From: Hypanus sabinus
Taxonomy: Eukaryota
Reading direction: 5' to 3'
NCBI RefSeq assembly: GCF_030144855.1
Contig: NC_082709.1
Coordinates: 125,240,001 to 125,304,000 of the forward strand
Length of the DNA: 64,000 bases
Translations under genes and position numbers: made by a program
Shown: positions 7,801 to 63,335 of the stretch, one piece after another
Layout of the letters: each line of letters begins with the position of its first letter
Position numbering within the stretch: position 1 is the first letter of the stretch
The notes under the pieces: model-generated
Told to the model about the DNA's origin: nothing
The model's input: the letters and a program-made list of their open reading frames with translations, nothing else
Database searches by the model: none

Positions 7801-8882
7801 TGAATTTCTGAAGCACATTACAGAAAATGTAAGCCAATTACTGAAGTAGTGAATATGGATTCATGCTTTGAAATTCTATTCTGTTATAGAACAAATGTAA
7901 ACAAATATAATAATTTACAAGCTTATCAAGTCTGACTGGTTGCAATATGAATCACACCACCATGGCTATTAGCCTTACTACAGGCATACACAATCCTACT
8001 TACCAGGATAGTTTTATGGACTCCCTCAACCACATACTGTTTTGACATGAATGAAGATTAAACTTAGAACTGAAACACCATCCTTCACTCATTGTGAATG
8101 ACTGGAGTTTGATTCCAAGCTTTTTTTTCAACCTGAGGCTGTAGTAAACTTAAGTCTTACTCATTTAAAGCAATTTGGGCTATTGCAACAAACAATATCT
8201 AAAAAATGTATCAACTGCAGTGTGACCAACATGGGCACCATTATCCTGAAATAACTTTCTGCTTCTGACTCCTTAAAATTAAGAAAATCGACAAAGCCAA
8301 TTCTGCCTATGATAAGATTTGCACTATTTCCAGCTAAAAAGCATGCACTGTATATTGGAAAGCAAAAGTAATTGAGCCCTCTCTGCTCTCTGTGTCATTC
8401 CTGGAGAGGGATGGGCTCTGCCAGGTTTCAGATGCCCAAGACACGCCATATGATGAGCAATCACCAAAAAGATCAGTGCAAAAAGCTTGTCATGACTGCG
8501 CCCCGACGACTCCACCAGGAGTTAAGGGTGCACACACACAGACAACATGCCCTCTATGTGGATGAAGTCAAACCAGATGAGTAAAATCTCTATACAGCCC
8601 TCACTATGAAGGCTCATGTAATCAATTACATTACTTTCATACAATTCTTTAGCAGAATCCAGGCACTGTCAGTAAAATAAATCAGATAAAACAGAAACTG
8701 GAATGGTTGGATTGTAGCACTGCAGCATTGTAGACGGTGTGATTTATTCGAAAGCCAAATTTGTGTTCCACATGCAGCATCCATATTTATCTTTACTGCT
8801 TTCTGATTTTCAAGCTCACCTAAGGTAGCCAATTTTAGCTTAATCACTATCAACAGGTTATTTGCAGAACAGGTAAAATAAT

Positions 8883-9011
8883 CCTGAAGAAGCATCTCGG
8901 CCTGAAACATTGACTGTACTCCTTTCCCTAGATGCGCCTGACCTGCTGAGTTCCTCCAGCATTTTGTGTACGTTGGCTTGGATCTCCAGCACCCACAGAT
9001 TTTCTCGTGCT
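8883..9011 (+). mobile_element. Penelope-like element pLTR fragment with degenerate hammerhead motif
   Basis: CTGAAGAAGCATCTCGGCCTGAAACATTGACT...CCAGCATTTTGTGT; homologous to the terminal repeat of the GIY-YIG element at 44403-45634. Confidence 0.75.
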
Positions 9012-9049: not shown

Positions 9050-9700
9050 ATCTGGCCCTTTGGACCACTGAGACCATGTCAAGCATGAGGTGCCCATTTT
9101 TATACTAATCCTACCTGAGCCATCTGTTCTTTCCATGCCGTCATCAACTCCCCAGATTATACTACTCAGCTACATATCGGGGTGTATTAATCTCAGATTA
9201 TACTACTCAGCTACCTACCAGGGTGTATTAATCTCAGATTATACTACTCAGCTACATATTGGGGTGTATTAATCTCAGATTATACTAAGCTACATATCGG
9301 AGTGTATTAATCTCAGATTATACTACTCAGCTACACATCAGGGTGTATTAATCTCAGATTATACTACTCAGCTACATATTGGGGTGCATTAATCTCAGAT
9401 TATACTACTCAGCTACATATCGGAGTGTATTAATCTCAGATTATACTACTCAGCTACACATCGGGGTGTATTAATCTCAGATTATACTACTCAGCTACAT
9501 ATCGGGGTGTATTAATCTCAGATTATACTCAGCTACATACTAGGGTGCATTAATCTCAAGATTATACAACTCAATTACATACTGGGGTGCATTAATCTAC
9601 CAACTCGTACATCTTTCAGATGCACAAAGGCAGCACTCAAGGTCAAGATTGAACAAAGATTGCTGGAACTCTGAACCAGGGCTCAACTAACTGCACTGCT
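9050..9700 (-). mobile_element. Degenerate tRNA-derived SINE hosting a minisatellite
   Basis: The flanks of the array match other SINE copies in the window (29450-29705, 42555-42772). Confidence 0.55.
9153..9598. repeat. Minisatellite, 11 copies of a ~41-bp unit
   Basis: Consensus CAGATTATACTACTCAGCTACATATCGGGGTGTATTAATCT. Unit lengths 41,41,41,38,41,41,41,41,41,38,42. Confidence 0.97.
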
Positions 9701-10612
9701 GTGGTATCCACTATCCAACCCAAATATTATCTGAAAGCAATGTATGCACAAACTTTAGAGTCACCAGAGGAGGAGCATGAATCCTAGTTCAAGAAAGAAG
9801 GCAACAAACCCCAACGAAAGCACCTGGACACCTGCCATTGAGGAAACTCAGCTGAACTAATGGAACAACTGTATGTTTATCTACTGAGTTATGGTGATAC
9901 TAACCATGGTGGTTTTTCATAACACAAGTGATGTGTCTCAATACCTTAGACACACCACTGTAATATTGCCCAATATACAAATCACAAAACCCAGCCTATT
10001 TAGGTCTGATCAGTCCTTTTCCAGTCAGCTGTTAGTCAAAGCCGGTACTAGCAAATGCAAAAACAGCAGGGTTTTCTTGAGTCACTAATAAGAAAAAAAC
10101 AACTCAATTTTTATTTCCCACAGCCCCTCACCAAAATAAAACAAGGTACCCTTGAGGAAGTGCTTCCCTGTTTGAAGGGATAACATCACTGGCGTGAGCA
10201 CACTGTCAGACTGACAACCCAGAGCTGCAGAGGAAGTATTCCGCTTCCTTTGCCCTCTCGAGAGTTGACTTAAGATTCCAGAGCACCATTCCAAAGGTCA
10301 GTAGCGAGTCTCCCGGGTGTCCTGGCTAGAACTTGTCCCCTCCGCCCCCAATCCGAGAAACAAGACACCAGGTCTGTAGATCTTGCCCTGTACGGAATGG
10401 TTTCTAGATTCCGTGTGTCAAAAATACTGCGCTCTTTGCATGCGCCCAGAGGTGCAAGTTTGGGGGGAAATTCAGGCCACGTTTCTGCGGCACTGGGATG
10501 GAGAAACAGCAATGAAGATTGGTGCTTCTGAGATACACAGTCTAAAACAGCTGACATTGCTGCGTGGGCCAAAGGGCTTTTACCAGCGTCGTGGCGGAAG
10601 CCAATAACTTAC

Positions 10613-10654
10613 CCGCACGTTGCCTTTGGTTCGCTGTTTGTTTTTGCCACCCAT
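10613..10654 (-). CDS. LTN1: LTN1 coding exon 1 (start codon)
   Basis: ATG GGT GGC AAA AAC AAA CAG CGA ACC AAA GGC AAC GTG CGG = MGGKNKQRTKGNVR. Strong Kozak (GTGATGG), donor CGG|gtaagt, in frame with exon 2. Confidence 0.96.
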
Positions 10655-10870
10655 CACAGGTGCCCCTCCCCCAGGCCGGGATCGGGTCCGCCGCCACCAC
10701 GCCAAACTTCGGTTACTTTCAGAGAGCCACGACTCTCCACACTGCCCAGGCGTTGCGCTTGCGCAGGTGAACGGGCTGGTTGCCGTCCCTCACTAGCCGC
10801 CGGCTGGAAACCGCAGCGCCAACAGGGAGTTCCGTCTCTGGCGTTCCCTCTTTTCTCGGGAGCAGTAGTT
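10655..10870 (-). promoter_or_regulatory. LTN1: LTN1 5' UTR / CpG-rich promoter with NRF1-like site
   Basis: CpG-dense island in an AT-rich background. TGCGCTTGCGCA at 10754-10765 is one mismatch from the NRF1 consensus. Confidence 0.7.
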
Positions 10871-11040
10871 GCGGATGGATTTGAAGGAACAGATCTTTCA
10901 CCAAACTTAAATGTGTTGAAAGTGTTGCCGGAATTCATTTGACAATGACAGATAATAAACACTACATTCGTGTCACAACTTTAATGTAGGAAACCAGTTC
11001 ACAGAAACTTCTTAAAGCAGATAAATGAGCAGAGCTAAAT

Positions 11041-11192
11041 CCCTTACTATCTCTAATTTCAGTTAGTCCTGACGAAGGGTCTCGGCCCGAAACGTCGACT
11101 GCATTTCTTCCTATAGATGCTGCCTTTCCTACCGCGTTCCACCAGCATTTTGAGTGTGTTGCTTGAATTTCCAGCATCTTCAGATTTCTTCG
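11041..11192 (+). mobile_element. Penelope-like element pLTR/tail fragment (young)
   Basis: Closely similar to 45515-45634 and to the reverse complement of 44410-44555. Confidence 0.85.
11065..11100 (+). ncRNA. Minimal type-I hammerhead ribozyme motif (PLE-associated)
   Basis: AGUC-CUGACGA-A-GGGU(CUCG)GCCC-GAAA-CGUC-GACU: helix I AGUC/GACU, both core boxes, helix II, palindromic ACGU at helix III, and a GUC cleavage triplet. Confidence 0.75.
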
Positions 11193-11454
11193 GGTAGTGA
11201 TCAAATGGTTGATTTAACGAAGGGGGATCCAAAAAGAGCTGACATTAATGGGATTAAGGTGAGCGATGTAAAAAGGAGTCCAATCACAAACAAGAGAAAA
11301 CCTGCAGATGCTGTGAGGGTCTCCGCCTGAAATGTCACCTGTACTCTTTTCCATAGATGCTGTCTGGCTCAGTGTAAAAAAGAGCCATTTGGCATTGGGA
11401 AATAAACATATAATTTATTTTCGGTGATGGAACTGGTATGCCTTTAGATACGTA

Positions 11455-12305
11455 CTGTGTCATGTCATCTGCAGAAATTCCTTGACGAGTTGACAATAGT
11501 TGAATGTATAAAGGGAGAATGAGAGGATGAATACAGGGCCCTGGTGAAGGACTTTATCAAATAGTGCAAACTGTATCATCTGTGCCTCAACATTAGTAAG
11601 ACAAAGGAGATGGTGATGGACTTTAAGACTAAGCTTGCATTGCTCTCTGTTGCTATTGATGGTGAGGACATGGATGTAGTGAGGACCTACAGCTATTTGG
11701 AAGTGTACCTGAATGACAGACTTGAGTGGAGCACCAACACAGAGGCTGTGTACAAGAAGGGCTGAAGTCACCTCTACTTCCTCAGGAGACTTAGGTTCTT
11801 TGGAATATGCAGGCCTCTCCTTCACATCTTCTACCAGTCCATTGTAATCAGTACAATCTTCTATGCAATGGTGTGCTGGAACAATGGCATAAACACAGGT
11901 GATGCCAACAGGCTCAATAAACTGATTAGAAAGGCTGGCTCTGTTATAGGAATCAAAGTGGACACACTGGAGGCTGTGGCCGAACAAAGAACCCTATGGA
12001 AAATACTGGCAATTCTGGACAATCTTTCTCACCCTCTGCATGTCTCCTTGGCTGAACAGAGGAGCACTTTTAGTAATAGACTAAGACAACTGTTCTGCTC
12101 CGAAGAGTGCTATATGAGGTCGTTCTAAACCTCAGCCGTTATGAGTCAACCTATAGTTGGGGAAGTGATGACCCCCTCCTGTTAGTTTGTGGTAACTTAT
12201 TTTTGAAATTCTTTATACTACTCTTCTAATATTTATATCTGTGCACTTGTAATACCGCTGTGATGCTGTAATTTAATTTGGGATCAATTAAGTATTGATC
12301 TATAT
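11455..12305 (+). mobile_element. Rex1/Babar-type LINE 3' fragment
   Basis: NISKTKEMVMDF and VCWNNGINTGDANRLNKLIRKAGSVIG...HPLH; ends in a GATCAAT/TATC tail. Confidence 0.8.
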
Positions 12306-18022: not shown

Positions 18023-18480
18023 TTACAAGTTGATTAATGTATGAGTAAAGATGCCATTAAGTACAGCTAATTATAGGGTTGGCCTTAAGTGTATGCACAT
18101 ATATTTGAATATAGGAATTGTGTGTTTTGTTGAAGGCTTCCCCTCCCACACCCAATGGGAAGAAGGACTAAAATTCAAGGTCTAGAGTTCTGGAAACAGT
18201 AAGAAGTACCTAGAGATAAGAAAACATATACTTTCCAATTACTAAAGTACACAATAAAAAAGTGTCACAGTAGAGTTCAACTTCAGATTTAGATTATATT
18301 AGATTAACTGTAATCTAAATATCAATATTTAACTGTTGAAAAGTTAAGGAAATGCTAATACTTAATGCTATTTTAATTATGACTTATCTATTCTGAAAAC
18401 CTATTATGAGGAATATATTTATCGATAATCATGTGCCCTGATGAACTACTCGATTAATTCCGAAGAAATAGTGTAGACTA

Positions 18481-18876
<396 letters not shown>

Positions 18877-21593: not shown

Positions 21594-22846
21594 TTGTCTG
21601 ACGAATTTTTTGAGGATGTAAATAGTAGAGTGGATGGGGAGAACCAGTGGATGTGGTATATTTGGACTTTCAAAAGGCTTTTGACAAGGTCCTACACAGA
21701 TTAGTGTGCAAACTTAAAGCACACGGCATTGGGGGTAGGGTATTGATGTGGATGGAGAATTGGTTGGCAAACACGAAGCAAAGAGTGGGAATGAACAGGA
21801 CCTTTTCAGAATGGCAGGCAGTGACTAGTGGGGTACCACAAGCCTCAGTGCTGGGACCCCAGTTGTTTACAATATATATTAATGATTTAGACGAGGGAAT
21901 TCAATGTAGCATCTCCAAGTTTGCGGATGACACGAAGCTGGGTGGCAGTGTTAGCTGTGAGGAGGATGCTAAGAGGATGCAGGGTGACTTGGATAGGTTA
22001 GGTGAGTGGGCAAATTCATGGAAGATGCAATTTAATGTGGATAAATGTGAGGTTATCAACTTTGGTGGCAAGAACAGGAAAACAGATTATTATCTGAATG
22101 GTGGCCGATTAGCAAAAGGGGAGGTACAGTGAGACCTGGGTGTCATTGTACACCAGTGATTGAAAGTGGGCATGCAGGTACAGCAGGCGGTGAAAAAGGC
22201 GAATGGTATGTTGGCATTCATAGCAAGAGGATTCAAGTACAGGAGCAGGGAGGTTCTACTGCAGTTGTACAAGGCCTTGGTGAGACCACACCTGGAGTAT
22301 TGTGTGCAGTTTTGGTCCCCTAATCTGAGGAAAGACATTCTTGCCATAGAGGGAGTACAAAGAAGGTTCACCAGATTAATTCCTGGGATGGCAGGACTTT
22401 CATATGAAGAAAGACTGGATCGACTGGGCTTATACTCGCTGGAATTTAGAAGATTGAGGAGGGATCTTATTGAAACGTATAAAATTCTAAAGGGATTGGA
22501 CAGGCTAGATGCAGGAAGATTGTTCCCGATGTTGGGGAAGTCCAGAATGAGGGATCACAGTTTAAGGATAAAGGGGAAGCCTTTTAGGACCGAAATGAGG
22601 AGAAACTTATTTACACAGAGAGTGGTGAATCTGTAGAATTCTCTGCCACAGGAAACAGTTGAGGCCGGTTTATTGGCTATATTTAAGAGGGAGTTAGATA
22701 TGGCCCTTGTGACTAAAGGGATCGGGGGCATGGAGAGAAAGCAGGTACAGGGTTCTGAGTTAGATGATCAGCCATGATCATACTGAATGGTGGTGCAGAC
22801 TCGAAGGGCTGAATGGCCTACCCCTGCACCTATTTTCTATGTTTCT
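21594..22846 (+). mobile_element. Young 5'-truncated CR1 LINE nested in L1 ORF2
   Basis: ORFs 21647-22132 and 22160-22636 (VYLDFQKAFDKV, SKFADDTKLG, RPHLEYCVQFWSP); (TTTCTATG)n tail. L1 ORF2 rejoins across it (RAH|MSKDKLAH). Confidence 0.93.
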
Positions 22847-25800
22847 ATGGGCCCTGCGTACTATCTTAAACTGAATTAAGGAGTGACGTGCACAGATAGA
22901 TGAATTATTAACTAGATAATAAATTTTACTCCATTGATCATCTGAAAGTGAACGTTGAAGTTCTATTTCCCAAGTATGTTTAACCTACTTGGCATCATAC
23001 GTACATTCATTAACTGCTTAAAAATAATAGCTATTAATTGTTTCTGAAATGGTTTAAGCTGAAAAATAGCATAAACCAAATTTAGTGAATAAGCCAATGG
23101 ATAGTTCAGTAAAAAATCACGTAAAAAATTCCTAACTTGCAAATATCTAAAAAAATGTGTACTAGATATATCATATTTATCCATTAACTGTGAAAAAGAC
23201 ATCAAACAATCCTCTAAAAACAAATCTAAAGAAGTTTTTATTCCCTTAGTTTTCCATATTAAAAAAGCCTTATCCAGAGTTGATGGTTTAAAGAAAAGGT
23301 TAGAATAGATATTACTAGAGAGTACAAAGTTATTTAATTCAAAAAATCTACGAACTGAAACGAAATTTTTAAAGTATGTTTAACAATAGGACTAAGACCT
23401 TGTCTACCTGTCCTGGAGAACAAAAAAAAGAAGAGGAACTCCTAGTAAAGAAGCTAAAGAAAACCCCCTTACTGAATTCTCCTCCAAATGTAACCATGAA
23501 GGGCAATCCTGGTTATCTACACCATAAATCCAGAAGGTGATACAACGAATATTAATTGCCCAATAATAAAATCTAAAGTTTGGTAGCACCAGTCCTCCAT
23601 CTTTTTTTTGATTTTTGCAATAAAAATTTATTCACTCTCGAGCTTTTATTATTCCAAATGTATGACAGAATCATGGAATCTATTCTATCAAAAAACATTT
23701 TCGGGACAAATGATGGAACCCTTTGAAATATACATAAACATTTTGGTAAAATAACCATTTTTATAGCATTTATTCGACCAATTAATGACATCGACATAGG
23801 TGACCATTTAGAAAGTGCTTGTTGAGTATATTCAATTAGAGGGGAAAAAATTATACTTTTATAGGTCTTTAAAATTTTTAGTAATTTTAATACCAAGGTA
23901 AGTAAAATAGTTTTTAGCAATATTAAAAGGTATTTGATCATAATAATCAGAATAATTATTAATAGGAAATAGTTCACTTTTATGAAAGTTGAGGTTATTT
24001 CCAGAGAAAATACTAAATTCTGTAAATATAGATAACATAAAAGGAATAGACTTTCTAGTGTCTGAAGTGTAAACTAATAAATCATCCGCATATAATGAAA
24101 CCTTATGTAATTTATCCCCTCTCTTAATACCCTGCACAGAATTAGAATCCCTAAGAGCAATAGCAAGTGGTTCTAAAACCAAATTAAATAATAAAGGATT
24201 GAGAGGTCAACCCTGACGAGTTCCTCCATATAATCTAAAATAAGGAGACTTTTGATTATTAGTTATAATCGCAGCCACCGGGGCTTGATAAATCAGTTTA
24301 ATCCAGGAAATAAATCCTGGACCAAAATTAAACCTCTTCAAAACCTGAAACAGATAAGGCCACTCCACCCTATCAAAAGTTTTCTCTGCATCCGGAGACA
24401 CAATACATTCAGATTCTTTGAATGAGGGGGAATAAATGATATTTAACAGTCTTCAAATATTAAAATGTGAGTAGGCAAAATATTCTCAAGTCTATTGGCT
24501 AGAATCTTAGAGAGAATTTTAAAATCTACATTCAGCAAAGAGATAGGTCTATAGGATGCACATTCTGATAAATCTTTTCCTTTTTTAGGAATCAATGAAA
24601 TTAATGCCTCATAAAAAGTTTTCGGAAGATTCCCAGAGGGTATAGAATCAGTAAAAGTTTGACGAAGATGTGGTATAAGTATTTCATGGAAAGTCTTGTA
24701 AAATTCCACCATATAACCATCTGGTCCCGGAGCTTTCCCTAATTGCATAGAGGATATAGCTTTAGCTATTTCCACTTGTTTAATAGGTGCATCTAATATA
24801 TCAACATCCTGAGTTGAAATTTTGGGTACACTTAATTTTTGCAAAAATGTATTCATAATAATAGTATTGTCAGAGAATTCAGATTTATAAAGATTAGAGT
24901 AGAAATCCATAAATATCTTAATAATTTCATAAGGATCTAAGGTTTCAGTTCTAACTGGTCTATGAATTTTTAAAATCTGTCTTCTAACCATACCAGCCTT
25001 TAACTGACCAGCCAAAAATTTACCTGACTTATCTCCATGTATATAAAATAGTCTTTTAGATTTAAGAATTGGCTGTTCGATGGGAAAGGTCAGAAGCAAA
25101 TCATATTGTGATTGAAGTTCAACCCTTTCTTTATGTAGGCCTTCAGTAGGTTTAACTGAATACACTTTATCTATCTCTAATTTTATTAGTAAGCACTGAC
25201 AGTTCCATTTTAATTTTCTTTCTTAAAGCTACTGAGTATGAAATTATCTGTACCCTAAGAAAAGATTTCATCATGTCCCATGTAACCAAGTTTGACATTC
25301 CTTCAGTTGTATTAAATTTAAAAAATATAGAAATTTGCTCCTTAATAAAAAATAACAAAAGCTGGATCCTGTAACAACATGGGATTCAATCTCCTCTGTA
25401 ACATTTTCAAAAAGCTATCAGAAAGCTTCAGGTTTAATTTCAAAGGCACGTGATCTGACAAGGCAATGATGTCATACGCACACTCAACAACGGAGTTTAA
25501 CAAATGTGTGACTGGAAAAAAGTAATCAATTCTAGAGTATTTATGATGAACATGTGAAAAAAAATCTTTGTCGTTAGGTGTTTATATCTCCAGATATCGA
25601 CCAGGCCATATTCTAGTAAACAAGAATTAATACAAGCCGCCGCTTTATTAGGAAGCGACGGATTGGTTGATGACCTATCAATTGCCGGGTTCAGACAGCA
25701 ATTAAAGTCACTGCCCATGATCAACATATTCATTCAAATTTGGTAGCTCAGACAAAAAGCTTCTTAAAAAATTCAGGATTATCTACATTAGGTACATATA

Positions 25801-31443: not shown

Positions 31444-33470
31444 CATAGAAACATGAAAATCTACAGCACATTACAGGCCCTTTGGCCCACAATGTTATGC
31501 TAACCATGTAACCTACTCAAGAAATTGCCTAGAATTTCCCTACTGCATAGCACTCTATTTTTCTAAGCTCCATGTACCTGTCTAAGAGGCTCTTAAAAGA
31601 CCCTATTGTATCCATCTCTTTCACCTTTGCTGGCAGTGCATTCCATACACTCACCATTCTCTGTGGAAAAACTTAACTCTGATATCCCCCTTGCACCTAC
31701 TTCCAAGCACCTTAAAACTATTATCCCCACATTGTACCCTTTTCAGCTGTGGGAAGAAGCCCCTGGCTATCCACACAATCAATGCCTCTCATTATCTTGT
31801 ACACCTCTATCAGGTCATCTCTCATCCTCTTTTGCTCCAAGGAGAAAAAGCCCAGTTCACTCAACCTATTCTCATAAGGCATACAACCCAATCCAGGCAA
31901 TATCTTTATAAATCTCCTCTGCACTCTAATGTAGGCTAGCTGGTGGTGCAATGGCATTAGCGCCGGACTCCGGAGCGAAGGTTCGCGAGTTCGAATCCAA
32001 GCCAGGCCACCCCCGAGCGTGCTTTCCGTCCGTGCCGGGTCGGGTGTCGAGCTAGCTGCTCGGCCTCATAAAGCAACAAGGGTCGAGTCAGGAATGTTCA
32101 TATCATGACTTGGTTAATCTGAAAGGAGACCAATCCTGACACCACGTGCCAGACTGACTGACTAGTGTGATCCGCTAAAAAAAACTAATGTATCCACATT
32201 CTTCCTGTAATGAAGTGACCAGAAGTGACACTCCAAGTTGGGTCTAACTAAGGTCTTAAATAGCTGTAACATTGCCTCACGGCTCTTGAACTCAATCTCA
32301 TTGTTGATGAAGGCCAACACACTATACACCTTCTTAACAACACTGTCAACCTGCGCAGCAGTTTTGAGTGTCCTGTTGACATGGACCCCAAGATCTCACT
32401 GGTCCTCCACACTGCCAAGAGTCTTGCCATTAATATTGTATTCTGTCTTCAAATTTGACCTACCAAAATGAAGTACTTCACACTCATCTGGTTTGAACTC
32501 CATCTGCCACTTCTCAGCCCAGTTTTGCATCCTATCCATGTACCGCTGTAACCTCTGCCAATCCTCCAGACTATTCACAACACCCCTAACTTCTGGATCA
32601 CCATTAAACTTACTAACCCACCCTTCTACTTCCTCATCCAGGTCATTTATAAAAAATCACAAAGATCCCAGAACAGATCCCTGTAGAACACCACTGGTCA
32701 CCAATCTCCATGCAGAATATGAACCATCCACAACCAACCTTTGCCTTCTGTGGGCAAGCCAATTCTGGGTCCACGAAGCAACATCTCCTTGGAACCCATG
32801 CCTCCTTACTTTCTGAATGAGCTTTGCATGGGGAACCTTATCAAATGACTTACTGAAAACCATATACACCACATAAACTGCTCGACCTTCATCAATCTGT
32901 TTTGTTACATCCTCAAAGAATTCAATCAGGCTTGTAAGGCATGACCTGTCCTTGACACAGCCATGCTGACTATCCCTAATCAGATTATGTCTCTCCAAAT
33001 GCTCATAAATCCTGCCTGTCAGGATCTCCAACAACTTGCCCACCACTGCAGTCAGACTCACTGGTCTCTAATTTCCGGGACTATCTCTACTCCCTTTGTT
33101 TGAACAAGGGAACAACATCTGCAACCTTCCAATCCTCTGGTACTTCTCCCGTTCCTATTGATGATGTAAAAATCATCGCCAGAGGCTCATAAATCTCCTC
33201 CCTTGCTTCTCACATTAGCCTGGGGTATATCTCATCCAGTCCTAGTGATTTATCTAACTTGTACCTTTTGAAAGCTCCAGCAGATTCTCTTTCATAAGTT
33301 CTGTACACTCAAGTTTTTCAGTCTGCTGTAAGACATCTGCACAATTGCCAATTTCCTTTTCACTGGTGAATACTGAATTAAAGTATTAATTAAGTACCTC
33401 TGCTACCTCCTTTGGTTCCATACACATGTTTCCACTCTCACTACTGATTTGTCCTATTCTGACACGGCTC
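31444..33470 (-). mobile_element. CR1 LINE (5'-truncated) interrupted by a SINE
   Basis: ORFs 32657-33061 (SCLTSLIEFFEDVTK, SFDKVPH) and 31721-31957 (RMRDDLIEVYKIMRG); TTTCTATG tail near 31445. Confidence 0.88.
31934..32184 (+). mobile_element. Young tRNA-derived SINE with TSD
   Basis: A box TGGTGCAATGG (31944-31954), B box GTTCGAATCC (31989-31998), short A tail, 8-bp TSD CTAATGTA (31926-31933 and 32185-32192). Confidence 0.88.
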
Positions 33471-33895: not shown

Positions 33896-34214
33896 AGAGT
33901 CCAAATGCATTTCAGGAAGTGATGCAGCATATTAACTAACATGCTGTTGTGTCAGAATTATGTTTTTTCAGACACTGCTAACCTGTAGTAAAGAAGAGGT
34001 AGAGTGATGCTTAGAAAATAAAGAATAGATTCATTAAGGAGTAATGAAAATAAAATTATGATATTTTAAGATTGTTGCAAACAGATTATCCATGTTGGAA
34101 CACTTAATAGAACACATAGTAGAAATGAAGAGTATCTGTTAAATGGTGTGATATTACATAGTGTTGATTTTCAAAGGTTCTTATTAAATTGCTGAAAGCC
34201 AGTATGCAGACTCA

Positions 34215-35205
34215 TCACCCTGCCTTGTGTAGCTGGATCCTGGACTGCCTGTCAGATCGCTGGCAGGTGGTAAGAGTGGGCTCCCTCAACTCTGCCCCTC
34301 TGACCCGCAACTCAGGTGCTCCTCAGTGCTGTGTACTATGCCCCCTCCTTTACTCTCTGTATACCCATGACTGTGTCACCACTCACAGCTCCAATATGCT
34401 AATTAAATTTGCTGATGATACTACAATTGGCCTAATCTCAAATAATAATGAGGTAGCCTACAGAGAAGAAGTCATCTCCCTGACACAGTGGTGTCAAGAA
34501 AGCAACCTGTCCCTCAATGTCGCAAAATCAAAGGAGCTGGTTGTGGACTGCAGGAGGAATGGAGACAGGCTAACCTCCATTGACATCAACGGATCTAGGT
34601 TGAGAGGGTGAACAGCTTTAAGTTCCTTGGCAGTAACATCACTGAGGATCTCACGTGGTCTGTACATACCAACTGTGTGGTGAAAAAGGCACAACAGCAC
34701 CTCTTTCACCTCAGACAGTTGAAGAACATTGGTATGGGCCCCAAATCCTAAGAACTTTCTACAGGGGCACAATTGAGAGCATCCTGACTGGCTGCATCAC
34801 TGCCTGATGTGGGAACTATAACTCCTTTAATTGCAGGATTCTGCAGAGAGTGGTGCAGATAGACCAGTGCTTCTGTAGATGTGAACTTAACACTATTCAG
34901 GACATTTACAAAGACAGGGCCCGAAAGATCATTGGGGACTCGAGTCACCCCAACCACAATCTATTCAAGCTGTTAACCATCTGGGAAATGGTACTGCTGC
35001 ATAAAAGCCAGGACCAAAAGGCTCCAGGACAGTTTTTTCCACCAGGCCATCAGACTAATTAATTCATGCTGACACAACTGTATTTCTATGTTATATTGTT
35101 GTACATACTATTTATTATAAATTACTATAAACATTTAGAGGGAGACATAACGTAAAGATTTTTGCTCATTTATTTGAAGGATGTAAGAAGTAAAGTCAAT
35201 TCAAT
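34215..35205 (+). mobile_element. Rex1/Babar-type LINE (RT to 3' tail)
   Basis: LCSWILDCLSDR...PLLYSLYTHDC...IKFADDTT...LNVAKSKELVVD; tail TAAAGTCAATTCAATT. Confidence 0.85.
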
Positions 35206-39470: not shown

Positions 39471-41130
39471 GATATGATGGTGGGGGAGCAAGGCAGTACG
39501 GTTATTGGAAATGTGAAATAAAACAGAAAATTTTGGAACACCAAGTCAGATATCATCTGGGGAAGGAGATGGTTAAGGCTTCAAGTCAAGCTTCTGATAA
39601 AAGTTTGTTGGCCTGAAATGTTACCTGTGCTTCCCTTTCCAAAGGTATTGCCTGAAGGAAAGTGAGGCAAATCCTTTTTGTAGATGGATTTTAATTGGGA
39701 ACTGGCTACCTACAGAGGCAGGATCACCGAGACTTCTGAAAAGGAAATTACAGTATATAAGTGAGGGAAAATAAATTCAGTGGAGTTGGACTACAAGGAT
39801 AACTTCACAAGAGTCAAAGTTGACTTGATCTACCTTCTCTGCTGTGACTATTTTGTTAACTCTACACTTATTCTGTGGTGGGATTGTAACAAAGTACCAA
39901 ATGGATCACAACCACATAGGTTGGTCCAGCAAGCAAATACCGTAGATTGTGATCTATTTGGTTACAATCAGATAAATTGTCCAACCAAAATTTTCACCAG
40001 GTACTGAAATAGTTTATAACTGAATAATTATGACCAAATAGACTGCAACCAAAGTTTTCACAGCTGTTTTTAAATAGCAACGTAGCAGTTCTTGTTCCCT
40101 GATTTCCATCCAGTATTCAAAGCCAGAACTCTTTTTTTTCCCCCTCTCAGACAAAAGAGGAGCATGCCAAAAATTCACCCTTTGTCTTCAAGTTGATAAA
40201 AGTTCTAAATAGCTGTAATATCCTGCTGACTACACTTGATGGATTCTGGTGTTTATATCCAGGGTTCTTTTAGAAGTCAGGAAAGAGGCACAAGATTTGT
40301 TGCTTCACAATTGTTTTATTAAGAGTTGATAGAACAGGAACAGACAGTGAGGAAGTGGGCTCTACTCGATGATGGAGACAAAGGAACAAAGATGGTGCCT
40401 AGCACCTAGCATATAACAGCCACTTTTATACCGCAGAGTTTAGAAAAATTCCATTCAAAGCTGTGGATAAGAGGCAGCCAATTAGAAAGTACTCATTTGA
40501 ACACTGCCATACCAAGTTAACTAATGAGAAACCACTTATTCAAGTAATGCAGATTAAAGAAACTTCAAGAGCTTTCCAGTATTATACTTTCTATAGTCAC
40601 TAGAGGCGTGTTAAACTAGTGTGCATGTAACTTGCTGCCCATTACACCGCGGGCATTTAGGGCAGCAATGAAGGAGCTACACATGTATGTATAAGAACTA
40701 CTTAAAATACAAGCAGATAATTGTTAAACTGCAAAGAAAATAACAAACTGCCAGTTGTATTGTTCTGATACAATGAAAATTGTTTGTTAGAAAAAATATT
40801 AATTTAAAAATTATTAAAATAAATAGTTGAAAACATAAAAGTATGTTTGAAAAACTTACTTTTCCATGATCTCCCATTCATAAATGAAGATTCCAATTTC
40901 TTTGCAGAATGGAGACAAGTGATAGACATAGCAACATCTTGAGTTGTTTATTTTGGGATTCCAGCAGGATCAGAAAGTGTAAGCAGTTGATTGTTATCAG
41001 TCCCCTTTGCAACCTGGCTACAGATAATTTAATTCCGCCGATTACCTTCAGTTGTACATTTTTTCAGATGCTTCGTCTTACAAGTTTTTCTTTTTTTTAA
41101 GGTTATTGAAACCTAGTAAACAGCATTGGA

Positions 41131-43460: not shown

Positions 43461-44402
43461 TTCTTACCACAGGAGCCTAGGTTGTACCTCATCAGGCCCT
43501 GTCAACTTACTGTAATACCACCTTTCTAATGGTAACTTGTTCCAGATTTTCCAGGTCCAATGTATTTCTCCTCAGTGAACAAAGATGTGAAATATTTATT
43601 TAGGAACTCACCTGTGTTCTGTGACTCCATTTTATTCTCAAGGGTTCTACTCTTTCCTTGGTTACTTTTTAAAGTTTAATCTATTTACATTATATTTTGC
43701 AATTTTTTTTTAATGTCATTTTTCCTTCTGTTGTTCCTGTATGTTTTTAAATGCCCTCCTAAGCTTTCTATGCTCCTATTCGGCCTTTCCATTTTCAGTT
43801 CTCTATTACCAGCACCATACTCCCTTCCAGCTCTTGATATCCCGTAACATCAAAGGTTCCTTAGACTTGCTGTCCTTGAAGTTTTTCTACCTTCACTTCT
43901 GATTGACTTCCAGTTCAGAGTTGCTGCTCCTGATCTACTTTTGCCAGATTTTGTCATATTTAGTTCTTCCCCTAATTCAGGATCTAAATCTCTGAGTCAT
44001 CCGTATCCTTTCCTCATAACTGCATTGAAGCTTTACAGTTACAGTCACCATGACCAAAATACTCTTCTACTGTCAGTACCTCACCCTATATTCCCAAAGA
44101 TTAGATCTAGCACTGCCCTTTTGTTGGACAGAATGTATGTTGACTCCAAAAGTCTCGCCTCAATCCACTTGAATAATTCCACCCTCTCTCATCCCATTTG
44201 ATATTGGGGAAGTTGAAAACCTGTTATAGTAACCTTATTCTTACATTGTATACTTTGTTAAATCATGCTCTCTCCTGATTAATACCATCAGGTAGGATGG
44301 GCAGGAGCATGAAGACCCACAGTAAGCATTTAGGTAACATAATCTTCCCCTCAGTTATCAGGTTTTTGAACAGTCCATGAACACCAGTTCAGAATTCTTT
44401 TG

Positions 44403-45634
44403 AAAAGGAAACACGAGGAAATCTGCAGATGCTGGAAATTCAAGCAACACACACAAATGCTGGTGGAACACAGCAGGCCAGGCAGCATCTATAGGAAGAA
44501 GCACTGTCGACATTTCAGACCGAGACCCTTCGTCAGGACTAAGGAAAGATAGTAAGAGATTTGAAAGTAGGAGGGGGGGAATACGAAATGATAGGAGAAG
44601 ACCGGAGGGGGGTGGGGTGAAGTTGAGAGCCGGAAAGGTGATTGGCAAAAGGGATACAGAGCTGGAGAAGGGAAAGGATCATGGGACGGGAGGCCTAGGG
44701 AGAAAGAAAGTTTGGGGGGGAGCACCAGAGGGAGATGGAGAACAGGCAGTGATGGGATGAGACAGAGGAAAAAAATAGGAGGGGGGAAAACTAAATATAC
44801 CAGGGATGGGGTAAGAAGGGGAGGAAGGGCATTAATGGAAGTTAGAGAAGTCAATGTTCATGCCATCAGGTTGGAGGCTACCCAGCTGGTATATAAGGTG
44901 TTGTTCCTCCAACCTGAGTATGGCTTCATCTTGCCAGTAGAGGCCATGGATAGACATATCAGAATGGGGATGGGGCGTGGAATTAAAATGTGTGGCCACT
45001 GGGAGATCCTGCTTTCTCTGGCAGACAGAGCGTAGGTGTTCAGCGAAACGGTCTCCCAGTCTGCGTCGGGTCTCACCAATATATAAAAGGCCACATCGGG
45101 AGCACCGGACGCAGTAAACCACACCAGCTGACTCACAAGTGAAGTGTCGTCTCACCTGGATGGACTGTCTGCGGCCCTGAATGGCAGTGAGGGAGGAAGT
45201 GTAAGGGCAGGTGTAGCTCTTGTTCCGCTTACAAGGATAAGTGCTAGAAGGGAGATTGGTGGGAAGGGATGGGGGGGGGGGACGAATGGTCAAGGGAGTC
45301 GCGTAGGGAGCAATCCCTGCGGAAAGCAGAAAAGGGGGAGGGAAAGATGTGCTTGGTCGTGGGATCCCGTTGGAGGTGGGCCCGTCCCATGATCCTTTCC
45401 CTTCTCAGCTCTGTATCCCTTTTGCCAATCACCTTTCCAGCTCTCAGTTTCACCCCACCCCCTCCGGTCTTCTTTCATTTTGCATTTGCCCCTCCCCCTC
45501 CTACTTTTAAATCTCTTACTATTTTTCCTTTCAGTTAGTCCTGACGAAGAGTCTCGGCCCGAAACGTTGACAGTGCTTCTTCCTATAGATGCTGCCTGGC
45601 CTGCTGTGTTCCACCAGCATTTTGTGTGTGTTGC
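44403..45634 (-). mobile_element. Penelope-like element (5'-truncated) with GIY-YIG endonuclease and inverted pLTR
   Basis: ORF 44832-45293: FTCESAGVVYCVRCSRCGLLYIGETRRRLGDRFAEH...EQHLIYQLGSLQPDGMN. Inverted repeat 44444-44690 / 45381-45634. 14-bp TSD TCAGAATTCTTTTG (44389-44402 and 45635-45648). Confidence 0.93.
45537..45572 (+). ncRNA. Minimal hammerhead motif in the inverted pLTR (a second copy lies on the minus strand at 44506-44540)
   Basis: AGTC CTGACGA AGAGTCTCGGCCC GAAA CGTT GAC; one helix II mismatch. Confidence 0.6.
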
Positions 45635-45689
45635 TCAGAATTCTTTTGTACTCTTTATTTACTTGTTATAACTTATGGTAATTTTTAAG

Positions 45690-62880: not shown

Positions 62881-63054
62881 TTTATCTCTTGACAGACTCT
62901 GCCTTCCCAGCGTCTACAAGGCCCAAATCAGGGTCCTAATGAAGCACTTTCCACTTGCCTTGATGTGCACTGTTAACAGCTCTTTAAGAATTTTGATGCC
63001 ATCTAGAATAAGGCAAACTTCTTAATTGACTCCTCCTCCACCAAGTTAAATGAA

Positions 63055-63335
63055 CACATACAAACACGCTGGATGAACTCAGCAGGTCGGACAGCATCCG
63101 TTGAAAAGAGCAGTCAACGTTTTGGGCCAAGACCCTTTGTCAGGACTGAAGAAGGAGGGGGCAGGGACCCTATAAAGAAGGTGGGGGGAGGGGAAGGTGC
63201 AGGTGAAAAATCAGTCAGAGGAAAGATCAAGGGGTGGGAGAGGGGAAGCAAGGAAGGGATAGGCAGGAGAGAGGTGAAGAAGGAATGTAAAAGGAAAGGA
63301 CTATGGGTAGTAGAAGAAGGCAGAGTCATGAGAGA
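63055..63335 (-). mobile_element. Penelope-like pLTR fragment with a mutated hammerhead core
   Basis: Minus strand CAGTC CTGACAA AGGGTCTTGGCCC AAAA CGTT GACTG (core G>A changes) plus a purine-rich pLTR body. Confidence 0.75.

What the first reader, a model, noticed from the sequence alone, without database searches (positions are those of the whole stretch)
11065..11100. Intact-looking minimal hammerhead ribozyme just upstream of the LTN1 promoter, on the divergent strand
Seen: AGUC CUGACGA A GGGU-CUCG-GCCC GAAA CGUC GACU, with both conserved boxes, a 4-bp helix I, helix II, a GUC triplet and a palindromic ACGU in place of a full helix III. It lies in a Penelope pLTR fragment ~410 bp upstream of the LTN1 ATG. 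Known: Penelope-like elements carry minimal type-I hammerheads thought to cleave efficiently as dimers. Inference: this is the best-preserved copy in the window, and it is oriented to be transcribed in any upstream-antisense RNA from the LTN1 CpG promoter, where it could act as a self-cleaving 3' end.
Basis: partly seen in the sequence, partly recalled or inferred. Interest (0 to 1): 0.7.

Follow-up and report, generated by a model that had tools for sequence, protein, structure and literature searches.

The report
Penelope retrotransposon tail with hammerhead motif
The hammerhead-ribozyme motif is really there and complete, but it sits in a 162-base dead tail of a Penelope-like jumping gene, a known kind of motif, and as a lone copy it probably cannot cut itself or affect the neighbouring LTN1 gene.

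Summary
Window 11064-11101 (+) reads as a complete minimal type-I hammerhead: 5-bp helix I, CUGACGA, an unpaired A, a 4-bp helix II, GAAA, a palindromic ACGU and C17 at 11096. It is the only complete copy among seven family copies in the window. About 0.05 such motifs are expected by chance.

It lies in a 5'-truncated 3' tail (11035-11198) of a Penelope-like element (PLE). A fuller copy at 44404-45293 carries the same tail downstream of a GIY-YIG endonuclease ORF. All four hallmarks of the published PLE "min-HHR" are met (Cervera & de la Pena 2014).

The geometry is as stated: the LTN1 ATG is at 10654 (-), 411 bp away on the other strand.

The functional inference is not supported:
- A lone motif cannot form helix III, because its loop would be 2 nt.
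- The predicted monomer fold pairs the catalytic box with the cleavage site.
- The only nearby copy (11315) has lost its box and helix I.
- An AAUAAA lies between the CpG island and the motif.
- Published single min-HHRs showed no cleavage in vitro.

The other copies are broken mainly by CpG decay, and this one sits on a CpG-island shore, so its preservation may need no selection. Earlier reports of this scan judged the same motif ordinary elsewhere in this genome. Verdict: a known kind and a passive relic.

The parts
11035..11198 (+). 5'-truncated 3'-terminal (pLTR/tail) fragment of a Penelope-like element, sense on the + strand
   Evidence: nhmmer with the family alignment A2 matches 11035-11196, E 8.5e-49. 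It aligns with the tail downstream of the GIY-YIG ORF at 44404-44570(-). The solo copies share about the same 3' end and start at different 5' points.
11064..11101 (+). Complete minimal type-I hammerhead motif
11064..11068 (+). Helix I, 5' strand (UAGUC), pairs with 11097-11101
   Evidence: 5/5 pairs, including one U-G
11069..11075 (+). Catalytic box CUGACGA (C3-A9)
11076..11076 (+). Unpaired A between position 9 and 10.1, a hallmark of PLE min-HHRs
   Evidence: bulge = 1; feature listed in PMC4209133
11077..11088 (+). Helix II hairpin GGGU-CUCG-GCCC, with G10.1-C11.1 = G11077-C11088
11089..11092 (+). GAAA box (G12 A13 A14 A15.1)
11092..11095 (+). Palindromic ACGU replacing helix III/loop 3. 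It can pair only with the same tetranucleotide of a second copy.
11096..11096 (+). C17; the predicted scissile bond is 3' of this base
   Evidence: hammerhead numbering applied
11097..11101 (+). Helix I, 3' strand (GACUG)
10613..10654 (-). LTN1 exon 1 coding part (MGGKNKQRTKGNVR), followed by a GTAAGT donor site
   Evidence: Calling it LTN1 rests on my recollection of the listerin N-terminus and on synteny with RWDD2B-like and USP16 (note s1-213532).
10300..10880 (.). CpG island over the LTN1 start (CpG o/e 0.67-0.87; window background 0.28)
10954..10959 (+). AATAAA poly(A)-signal hexamer on the ribozyme's strand, between the CpG island and the motif
11315..11375 (+). Second, degenerate fragment of the same family: CUGANGA box and helix I lost, 0 of 5 CpGs kept. 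It is not a tandem unit.
44404..45293 (-). Reference PLE copy: GIY-YIG endonuclease ORF end (44832-45293), then a 3' tail with the hammerhead at 44504-44541

Best explanation
A Penelope-like retrotransposon inserted about 380 bp upstream of the LTN1 start and was truncated at its 5' end. It left a 162-164-bp 3' tail (11035-11198, sense on +). That tail carries the family's own minimal type-I hammerhead, which in active elements is thought to process element transcripts by pairing two copies into a double hammerhead. Here the motif is a lone copy. A15.1 and U16.1 enclose only two nucleotides, so helix III cannot form within one molecule. The catalytic-box bases GACG can instead pair with CGUC at the cleavage site, locking an inactive rod. 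The motif is therefore most likely a catalytically silent relic with no role in LTN1 expression. Its intact state needs no selection. All five lesion-prone sites in the motif are CpGs, and this copy sits on the shore of a CpG island, where CpG loss is attenuated. It may also simply be young. Shown: the motif, its family, its PLE origin, the geometry, the fold predictions and the CpG pattern. Inferred: inactivity in vivo and the reason for preservation.
For: The motif is complete and unique in the window. Family copies lie at 8848-9011, 11315-11375, 44410-44569, 45502-45642 and 63046-63150. The copy at 44404-45293 (-) places the same tail about 290 nt downstream of the stop of an ORF reading CSRCGLLYIGETRRRLGDRFAEH. 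Pfam GIY-YIG scores E 3.8e-4 on that ORF. Its nearest ESM Atlas clusters are animal GIY-YIG and RT+GIY-YIG proteins, score 0.96. All four extra hallmarks of PLE min-HHRs are present: an unpaired nt after A9, G10.1-C11.1, palindromic 15.2-16.2, and location in the PLE terminal region (checked). The monomer MFE is -13.6 kcal/mol and pairs GACG with CGUC. The hammerhead-like fold with helices I and II only is -9.6. The double-hammerhead dimer is -18.1, against -27.2 for two free monomers. In the other four full-length copies, 10 of 19 differences from this 38-mer are CpG transitions. They keep 4, 3, 1 and 1 of the 5 CpGs, against 5 of 5 here. CpG o/e is 0.43-0.48 in the fragment's flanks, 0.28 in the whole window and 0.13 in the adjacent 11460-12130 repeat. 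In the literature, a single min-HHR gave no detectable cleavage and dimers only low cleavage (PMC4209133). The review PMC6765202 agrees. Axolotl type-I hammerheads are weak as monomers and much better as dimers (PMC7229834).
Against: Nearest-neighbour energies ignore tertiary contacts and protein chaperones. The authors of PMC4209133 suspect that host factors raise activity in vivo. The HHR core differs from the inferred ancestor of the 44512/45541 pair at about 1 of 36 positions, and the rest of the tail at about 12 of 97. This could hint at constraint, but the numbers are small and subfamily differences confound them. The CpG-shore argument is only partly supported, because the immediate flanks are intermediate (0.43-0.48), not island-like. 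No transcription data or orthologous loci were available.
Confidence: 0.9

Rival explanations
1. Exapted ribozyme: upstream-antisense transcripts from the LTN1 CpG promoter run through the motif, which cleaves after C11096 and defines their 3' end.
For: The motif's sense strand points away from LTN1. It lies about 185 bp beyond the CpG island edge and 411 bp from the ATG. It is the only fully intact copy in the window. No plus-strand gene lies next door, since the next gene is RWDD2B-like on the minus strand at about 18.5 kb. Any plus-strand RNA here would therefore be a promoter-upstream transcript.
Against: A lone copy has no intramolecular helix III, and the predicted inactive fold is 4 kcal/mol more stable. 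The nearest family copy, 11315-11375, lacks the box and helix I, so it can neither donate a core nor be a substrate. The self-dimer in the hammerhead fold is 9 kcal/mol worse than two monomers. AAUAAA at 10954 with a downstream GU-rich stretch would, by the established PAS-dependent termination of upstream-antisense RNAs (my knowledge: Almada 2013, Ntini 2013), end most transcripts before 11065. Single min-HHRs are inactive in vitro.
Confidence: 0.03
2. Relic of a tandem non-LTR retrozyme: the copies at 11069 and 11315 would be two units of a ~245-bp repeat that once produced circular RNAs through a dimeric hammerhead.
For: Two same-strand family fragments lie about 245 bp apart. Vertebrate retrozymes derive from PLE pLTRs and have units of 170-400 nt.
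Against: Tandem Repeats Finder reports no repeat with a ~245-bp period here. The sequences between and around the two fragments do not align; only about 60 nt of the second copy matches the family. The second copy is much more decayed (21/38 identity, 0/5 CpGs), which implies a different age.
Confidence: 0.04
3. Chance resemblance: a hammerhead-like string with no relation to ribozymes.
For: No Rfam model matches it. The fold z-score of the 56-nt stretch is only -0.88.
Against: Only 0.05 descriptor hits are expected per window. The string is the conserved core of a seven-copy repeat family tied to a GIY-YIG element. It shows four family hallmarks that the descriptor did not demand.
Confidence: 0.01

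Closest known systems
Minimal hammerheads (min-HHRs) of metazoan Penelope-like elements (Cervera & de la Pena 2014, PMC4209133; Lunse, Weinberg & Breaker 2016, cited in PMC6765202)
   Same: Type-I topology, short helix I (5 bp), an unpaired nucleotide between A9 and 10.1, a G10.1-C11.1 pair, a palindromic 15.2-16.2 with no real helix III, a location in the PLE terminal repeat/tail, and frequent occurrence as single motifs in truncated elements or as inverted pairs.
   Different: Nothing of kind. Helix II is 4 bp, against 6-8 bp in the Schistosoma and Drosophila examples. The only local particular is the position next to a CpG-island promoter.
Double-hammerhead self-cleavage of newt satellite 2 and ASBVd RNAs (Forster et al. 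1988, cited)
   Same: An unstable helix III with a palindromic loop, so that two copies must pair to build two active sites.
   Different: Those RNAs are made as tandem multimers, so a partner is always present in cis. This copy has no intact partner within reach.
Metazoan non-LTR retrozymes (Cervera & de la Pena 2020, PMC7229834; Li et al. 2026 preprint, 10.64898/2026.07.22.740005)
   Same: PLE-pLTR-related sequence carrying a type-I hammerhead. Vertebrate versions need dimers.
   Different: Retrozymes are head-to-tail arrays expressed as circular RNAs. Here there is one truncated tail and no tandem structure.
Conserved intronic hammerheads of amniotes (Rfam HH9/HH10; de la Pena & Garcia-Robles 2010, as cited in PMC4209133 and PMC7229834)
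   Same: A vertebrate hammerhead at a gene locus. This is the precedent for host exaptation of a retroelement ribozyme.
   Different: By my recollection, HH9/HH10 have a stable helix III, cleave as monomers and are conserved across species. This motif meets none of the three, and no Rfam model matches it.

Membership tests
Hammerhead ribozyme (catalytic core) | Conserved boxes C3-U4-G5-A6-N7-G8-A9 and G12-A13-A14 | tested here: met
   CUGACGA at 11069-11075 and GAA(A) at 11089-11092
Hammerhead ribozyme (catalytic core) | A15.1/U16.1 followed by H17 (not G) at the cleavage site | tested here: met
   A11092, U11095, C11096
Hammerhead ribozyme (catalytic core) | Three helices around the core within one molecule | tested here: not met
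   Helix I (5 bp) and helix II (4 bp) are present. Helix III would enclose a 2-nt loop and cannot form; only an intermolecular ACGU/ACGU helix is possible.
Hammerhead ribozyme (catalytic core) | Match to a curated covariance model (Rfam hammerhead families) | tested here: not met
   No hit at the gathering score, nor at E<=10 in 601-nt and 66-nt stretches. This is expected, because min-HHRs were found with a custom RNAmotif descriptor.
Hammerhead ribozyme (catalytic core) | Site-specific self-cleavage | not testable with these tools
   Needs in vitro transcription. Published single min-HHRs are inactive and dimers weakly active.
PLE minimal hammerhead (min-HHR) | [quoted passage not shown] | tested here: met
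   A11076
PLE minimal hammerhead (min-HHR) | G10.1-C11.1 closing pair of helix II | tested here: met
   G11077-C11088
PLE minimal hammerhead (min-HHR) | Palindromic positions 15.2-16.2 / loop 3 | tested here: met
   ACGU at 11092-11095 (palindrome = True)
PLE minimal hammerhead (min-HHR) | Located in the terminal repeat/tail of an element encoding RT + GIY-YIG | tested here: met
   The homologous tail follows a GIY-YIG ORF at 44832-45293(-). The Pfam score of 21.2 is just under the 22.6 cut-off, and no RT part survives in that copy. The link therefore rests on GIY-YIG plus Atlas neighbours with RVT_1+GIY-YIG.
Non-LTR retrozyme | Head-to-tail tandem repeats of a 170-400-nt unit, each with a hammerhead | tested here: not met
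   No tandem repeat of that period. Sequence outside about 60 nt does not align between 11035-11198 and 11225-11445.

The most novel reading that the evidence does not exclude
The lone min-HHR has been co-opted. With help from host chaperones, or by trans-pairing with abundant transcripts of the same PLE family, it would cleave LTN1 upstream-antisense RNA after C11096. That would be a ribozyme-defined 3' end at a vertebrate CpG promoter, and the motif's five intact CpGs would reflect selection, not hypomethylation.
Probability: 0.02. Interest if true: 0.6.

Novelty: already known. Interest (0 to 1): 0.08.

Why it matters
It matters little as it stands. Minimal hammerheads in Penelope-like elements have been described since 2014 and occur in thousands of copies in non-mammalian vertebrate genomes. 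Earlier reports of this scan reached the same verdict for the same motif elsewhere in this genome.

One point is mildly useful. The motif's integrity hinges on five CpG dinucleotides, so intact copies should be over-represented near hypomethylated promoters for purely mutational reasons. Anyone screening for exapted ribozymes near promoters should control for that bias.

Tried and rejected
- **Rfam 15 covariance models.** Run on the whole window at gathering score, and on 601-nt and 66-nt stretches at E<=10. No hammerhead hit. The only hits were a weak snoU54-like match (17.8 bits against a cut-off of 35) and an S4-leader fragment, both taken as chance.
- **Tandem-repeat test for a retrozyme.** Negative.
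- **Public metagenome contigs.** One scan with a 24-specified-base version of the motif that tolerated helix II and CpG variation gave 0 matches, so no outside copies were available for covariation.
- **The search of earlier findings by sequence.** Blank.
- **Lunse et al. 2016 (PMC5785218).** Not held, so it is cited only through the review PMC6765202.
- **Pfam on the ORF pieces at 11610-12128.** Nothing useful, so my impression that they are a LINE reverse-transcriptase tail is unverified.
- **Target-site duplication around 11035-11198.** None convincing; only AAATG is shared at 11025 and 11203.
- **Covariation among the window's copies.** Not informative, because the variants are decay products rather than compensated changes.

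Full report
**The observation**

One more wobble pair, U11064-G11101, extends helix I to 5 bp. In standard hammerhead numbering:
- C3-A9 = 11069-11075.
- A11076 is unpaired.
- Helix II is G11077-U11080 paired with G11085-C11088, capped by CUCG.
- G12-A14 = 11089-11091.
- A15.1 = 11092, U16.1 = 11095 and C17 = 11096.

The predicted cut after C11096 is therefore correct.

I wrote a structural descriptor: box, 0-1 unpaired nt, helix II of at least 3 bp, GAAA, U-H, and helix I of at least 4 bp. It returns exactly one hit on both strands of the 64-kb window, this one. Across 200 second-order Markov shuffles the mean was 0.05 hits, and 0.01 with a palindromic helix III.

Rfam 15 gives no hammerhead match. 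That holds at gathering score on the whole window and at E<=10 on 601-nt and 66-nt stretches. It is expected, because this class was discovered with a custom RNAmotif descriptor: it lacks a helix III (PMC4209133).

**What the motif sits in**

A relaxed pattern search and alignments show a repeat family. An nhmmer profile of that alignment finds copies at these positions:
- 8848-9011 (+)
- 11035-11196 (+)
- 11315-11375 (+)
- 44410-44569 (-)
- 45502-45642 (+)
- 63046-63150 (-)
- a weak trace near 39601

The 44-45 kb pair are inverted arms around a minus-strand ORF. Its translation contains CSRCGLLYIGETRRRLGDRFAEH. Pfam GIY-YIG scores E 3.8e-4 and 21.2 bits, just under the 22.6 cut-off. The nearest named ESM Atlas clusters are animal GIY-YIG proteins, and by structure include RVT_1 + HTH_animal + GIY-YIG proteins.

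According to PMC4209133, reverse transcriptase plus a GIY-YIG endonuclease is the Penelope-like element (PLE) architecture. In that copy the hammerhead lies about 290 nt after the stop codon and about 100 nt from the element's 3' end, on the ORF's strand.

The copy under study covers only the last ~162 nt of that tail. The solo copies share about the same 3' end (CAGATTTyyTCG...) and start at different 5' points, about 8879 and 11037. That pattern fits 5'-truncated retrotransposition.

**Membership**

Cervera & de la Pena list four features that emerged beyond their descriptor: covarying consensus families, a nucleotide between 9 and 10.1, G10.1-C11.1, and palindromic 15.2-16.2. The last three can be read directly here, and all are met. 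They also report that most motifs are single, in truncated PLEs, and that some occur as inverted pairs 100-700 bp apart. The window shows both arrangements. This is a plain member of a published class.

**Geometry relative to LTN1**

The minus strand reads ATG GGT GGC AAA AAC AAA CAG CGA ACC AAA GGC AAC GTG CGG | GTAAGT, with the ATG at 10654. The peptide MGGKNKQRTKGN matches my recollection of the listerin N-terminus.

An exon with RWD + Prp3_C domains lies at 18478-18876 (-) and looks like RWDD2B. A note from this scan places USP16 at about 44 kb (s1-213532). Together these reproduce the LTN1-RWDD2B-USP16 order that I recall from human chromosome 21.

A CpG island spans about 10300-10880, with o/e 0.67-0.87. 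The motif starts 411 bp from the ATG on the opposite strand, and no plus-strand gene follows it.

**Would it work there?**

Several lines say probably not.

1. A15.1 and U16.1 enclose only C and G. A 2-nt hairpin loop is impossible, so a lone molecule has no helix III.
2. The minimum-energy monomer fold (-13.6 kcal/mol) pairs G5-A6-C7-G8 of the box with C15.2-G16.2-U16.1-C17, giving a continuous inactive rod. The fold with only helices I and II costs 4 kcal/mol more, at -9.6.
3. The domain-swapped double hammerhead of two such RNAs evaluates to -18.1 kcal/mol. Two free monomers give -27.2, and an extended non-catalytic duplex gives -35.5. These energies ignore tertiary contacts and proteins.
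4. The only nearby copy (11315-11375) has lost the CUGANGA box and all but one helix I pair. It can neither lend a core nor accept one. It is also not a tandem unit.
5. AATAAA at 10954-10959, followed by a GU-containing stretch, lies between the CpG island and the motif on the same strand. By established knowledge of promoter-upstream transcripts, which terminate at promoter-proximal poly(A) sites (my recollection: Almada 2013, Ntini 2013), many antisense transcripts would end before 11065.
6. Experimentally, a single min-HHR gave no detectable cleavage, and dimers or trimers gave only low cleavage. A review concurs. Axolotl type-I motifs are weak as monomers and much better as dimers.

**Why is this copy intact?**

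The 38-mer holds five CpGs: N7-G8, loop 2, C11.1-G12, C15.2-G16.2 and C17-G1.1. The other copies keep 4, 3, 1, 1, 0 and 0 of them. In the four full-length copies, 10 of 19 differences from this 38-mer are CpG-to-TpG/CpA transitions. The 63-kb copy, for example, is broken only by such changes.

The fragment's flanks have CpG o/e 0.43-0.48. The whole window has 0.28, and the neighbouring repeat at 11460-12130 has 0.13. A position on the shore of a presumably hypomethylated promoter island, or recent insertion, is enough to explain the preservation.

The shore values are intermediate, so I hold this explanation at moderate strength. By my hand count on the alignments, the core differs from the inferred ancestor of the 44/45-kb pair at about 1 of 36 positions, and the rest of the tail at about 12 of 97. 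That contrast is too small, and too confounded by subfamily, to argue for selection.

**Comparison and verdict**

The object works like, and is a member of, the PLE min-HHR class. It resembles the double-hammerhead systems of newt satellite 2 and ASBVd, but it lacks a partner. It is not a retrozyme array. It shares none of the properties I recall for the exapted amniote HH9/HH10 ribozymes: a stable helix III, monomeric activity and conservation across species.

Earlier reports of this scan on other pieces of the same genome reached the same conclusion for the same motif (s1-187801, s1-231685, s1-187794). Their figure of thousands of identical copies was not tested here.

I rate the passive-relic reading at about 0.9 and the upstream-antisense terminator reading at about 0.03. 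Novelty: already known. Interest: low.

Noticed in passing
window 9153-9598: A minisatellite with an 11-copy 41-bp unit (higher-order periods 120 and 161 bp, about 90% matches). It lies about 1 kb inside the LTN1 transcription unit, presumably in intron 1.
   Followed up: no
window 44389-45648: A PLE insertion made of a GIY-YIG ORF end plus tail on the minus strand, with an inverted, 3'-truncated copy of the tail upstream (arms 94-95% complementary). It is flanked by a direct repeat, cagaattcttttg, at about 44390 and about 45636. This was already noted by the scan (s1-213532).
   Followed up: partly
window 63046-63150 (-): Another solo PLE tail. Its hammerhead is broken solely by CpG decay: CUGACAA, UCUUGG, CCCAAAA, GUUGAC.
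   Followed up: yes
window 18478-18876 (-): An exon-sized ORF with RWD (E 8.5e-4) and Prp3_C (E 7.9e-15) domains, the RWDD2A/B architecture. This suggests conserved LTN1-RWDD2B-USP16 synteny.
   Followed up: no
window 11460-12130 (+): ORF pieces (…DRLEWSTNTEAVYKKG…, …DANRLNKLIRKAGSVIG…) that look to me like the C-terminal end of a LINE reverse transcriptase. Pfam gave no hit. CpG o/e is only 0.13, a sharp contrast with the PLE fragment 260 bp away.
   Followed up: partly
window 21647-22132 (+), 24443-25165 (-), 32657-33061 (-), 34189-34611 (+): Four reverse-transcriptase (RVT_1) ORF fragments, so the RWDD2B-USP16 interval is dense in retroelement debris.
   Followed up: no
window 11390-11446 (+): A weak snoU54-like C/D-box match (17.8 bits against a gathering score of 35, E 0.7 in a 601-nt search), most likely chance.
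   Followed up: no
window 11298-11314 (+): Just before the degenerate copy, the string AAAACCTGCAGATGCTG resembles the reverse complement of the PLE 3' end (CCAGCATCTGCAGATTT). This hints at a small inverted junction like the one at 44-45 kb.
   Followed up: no
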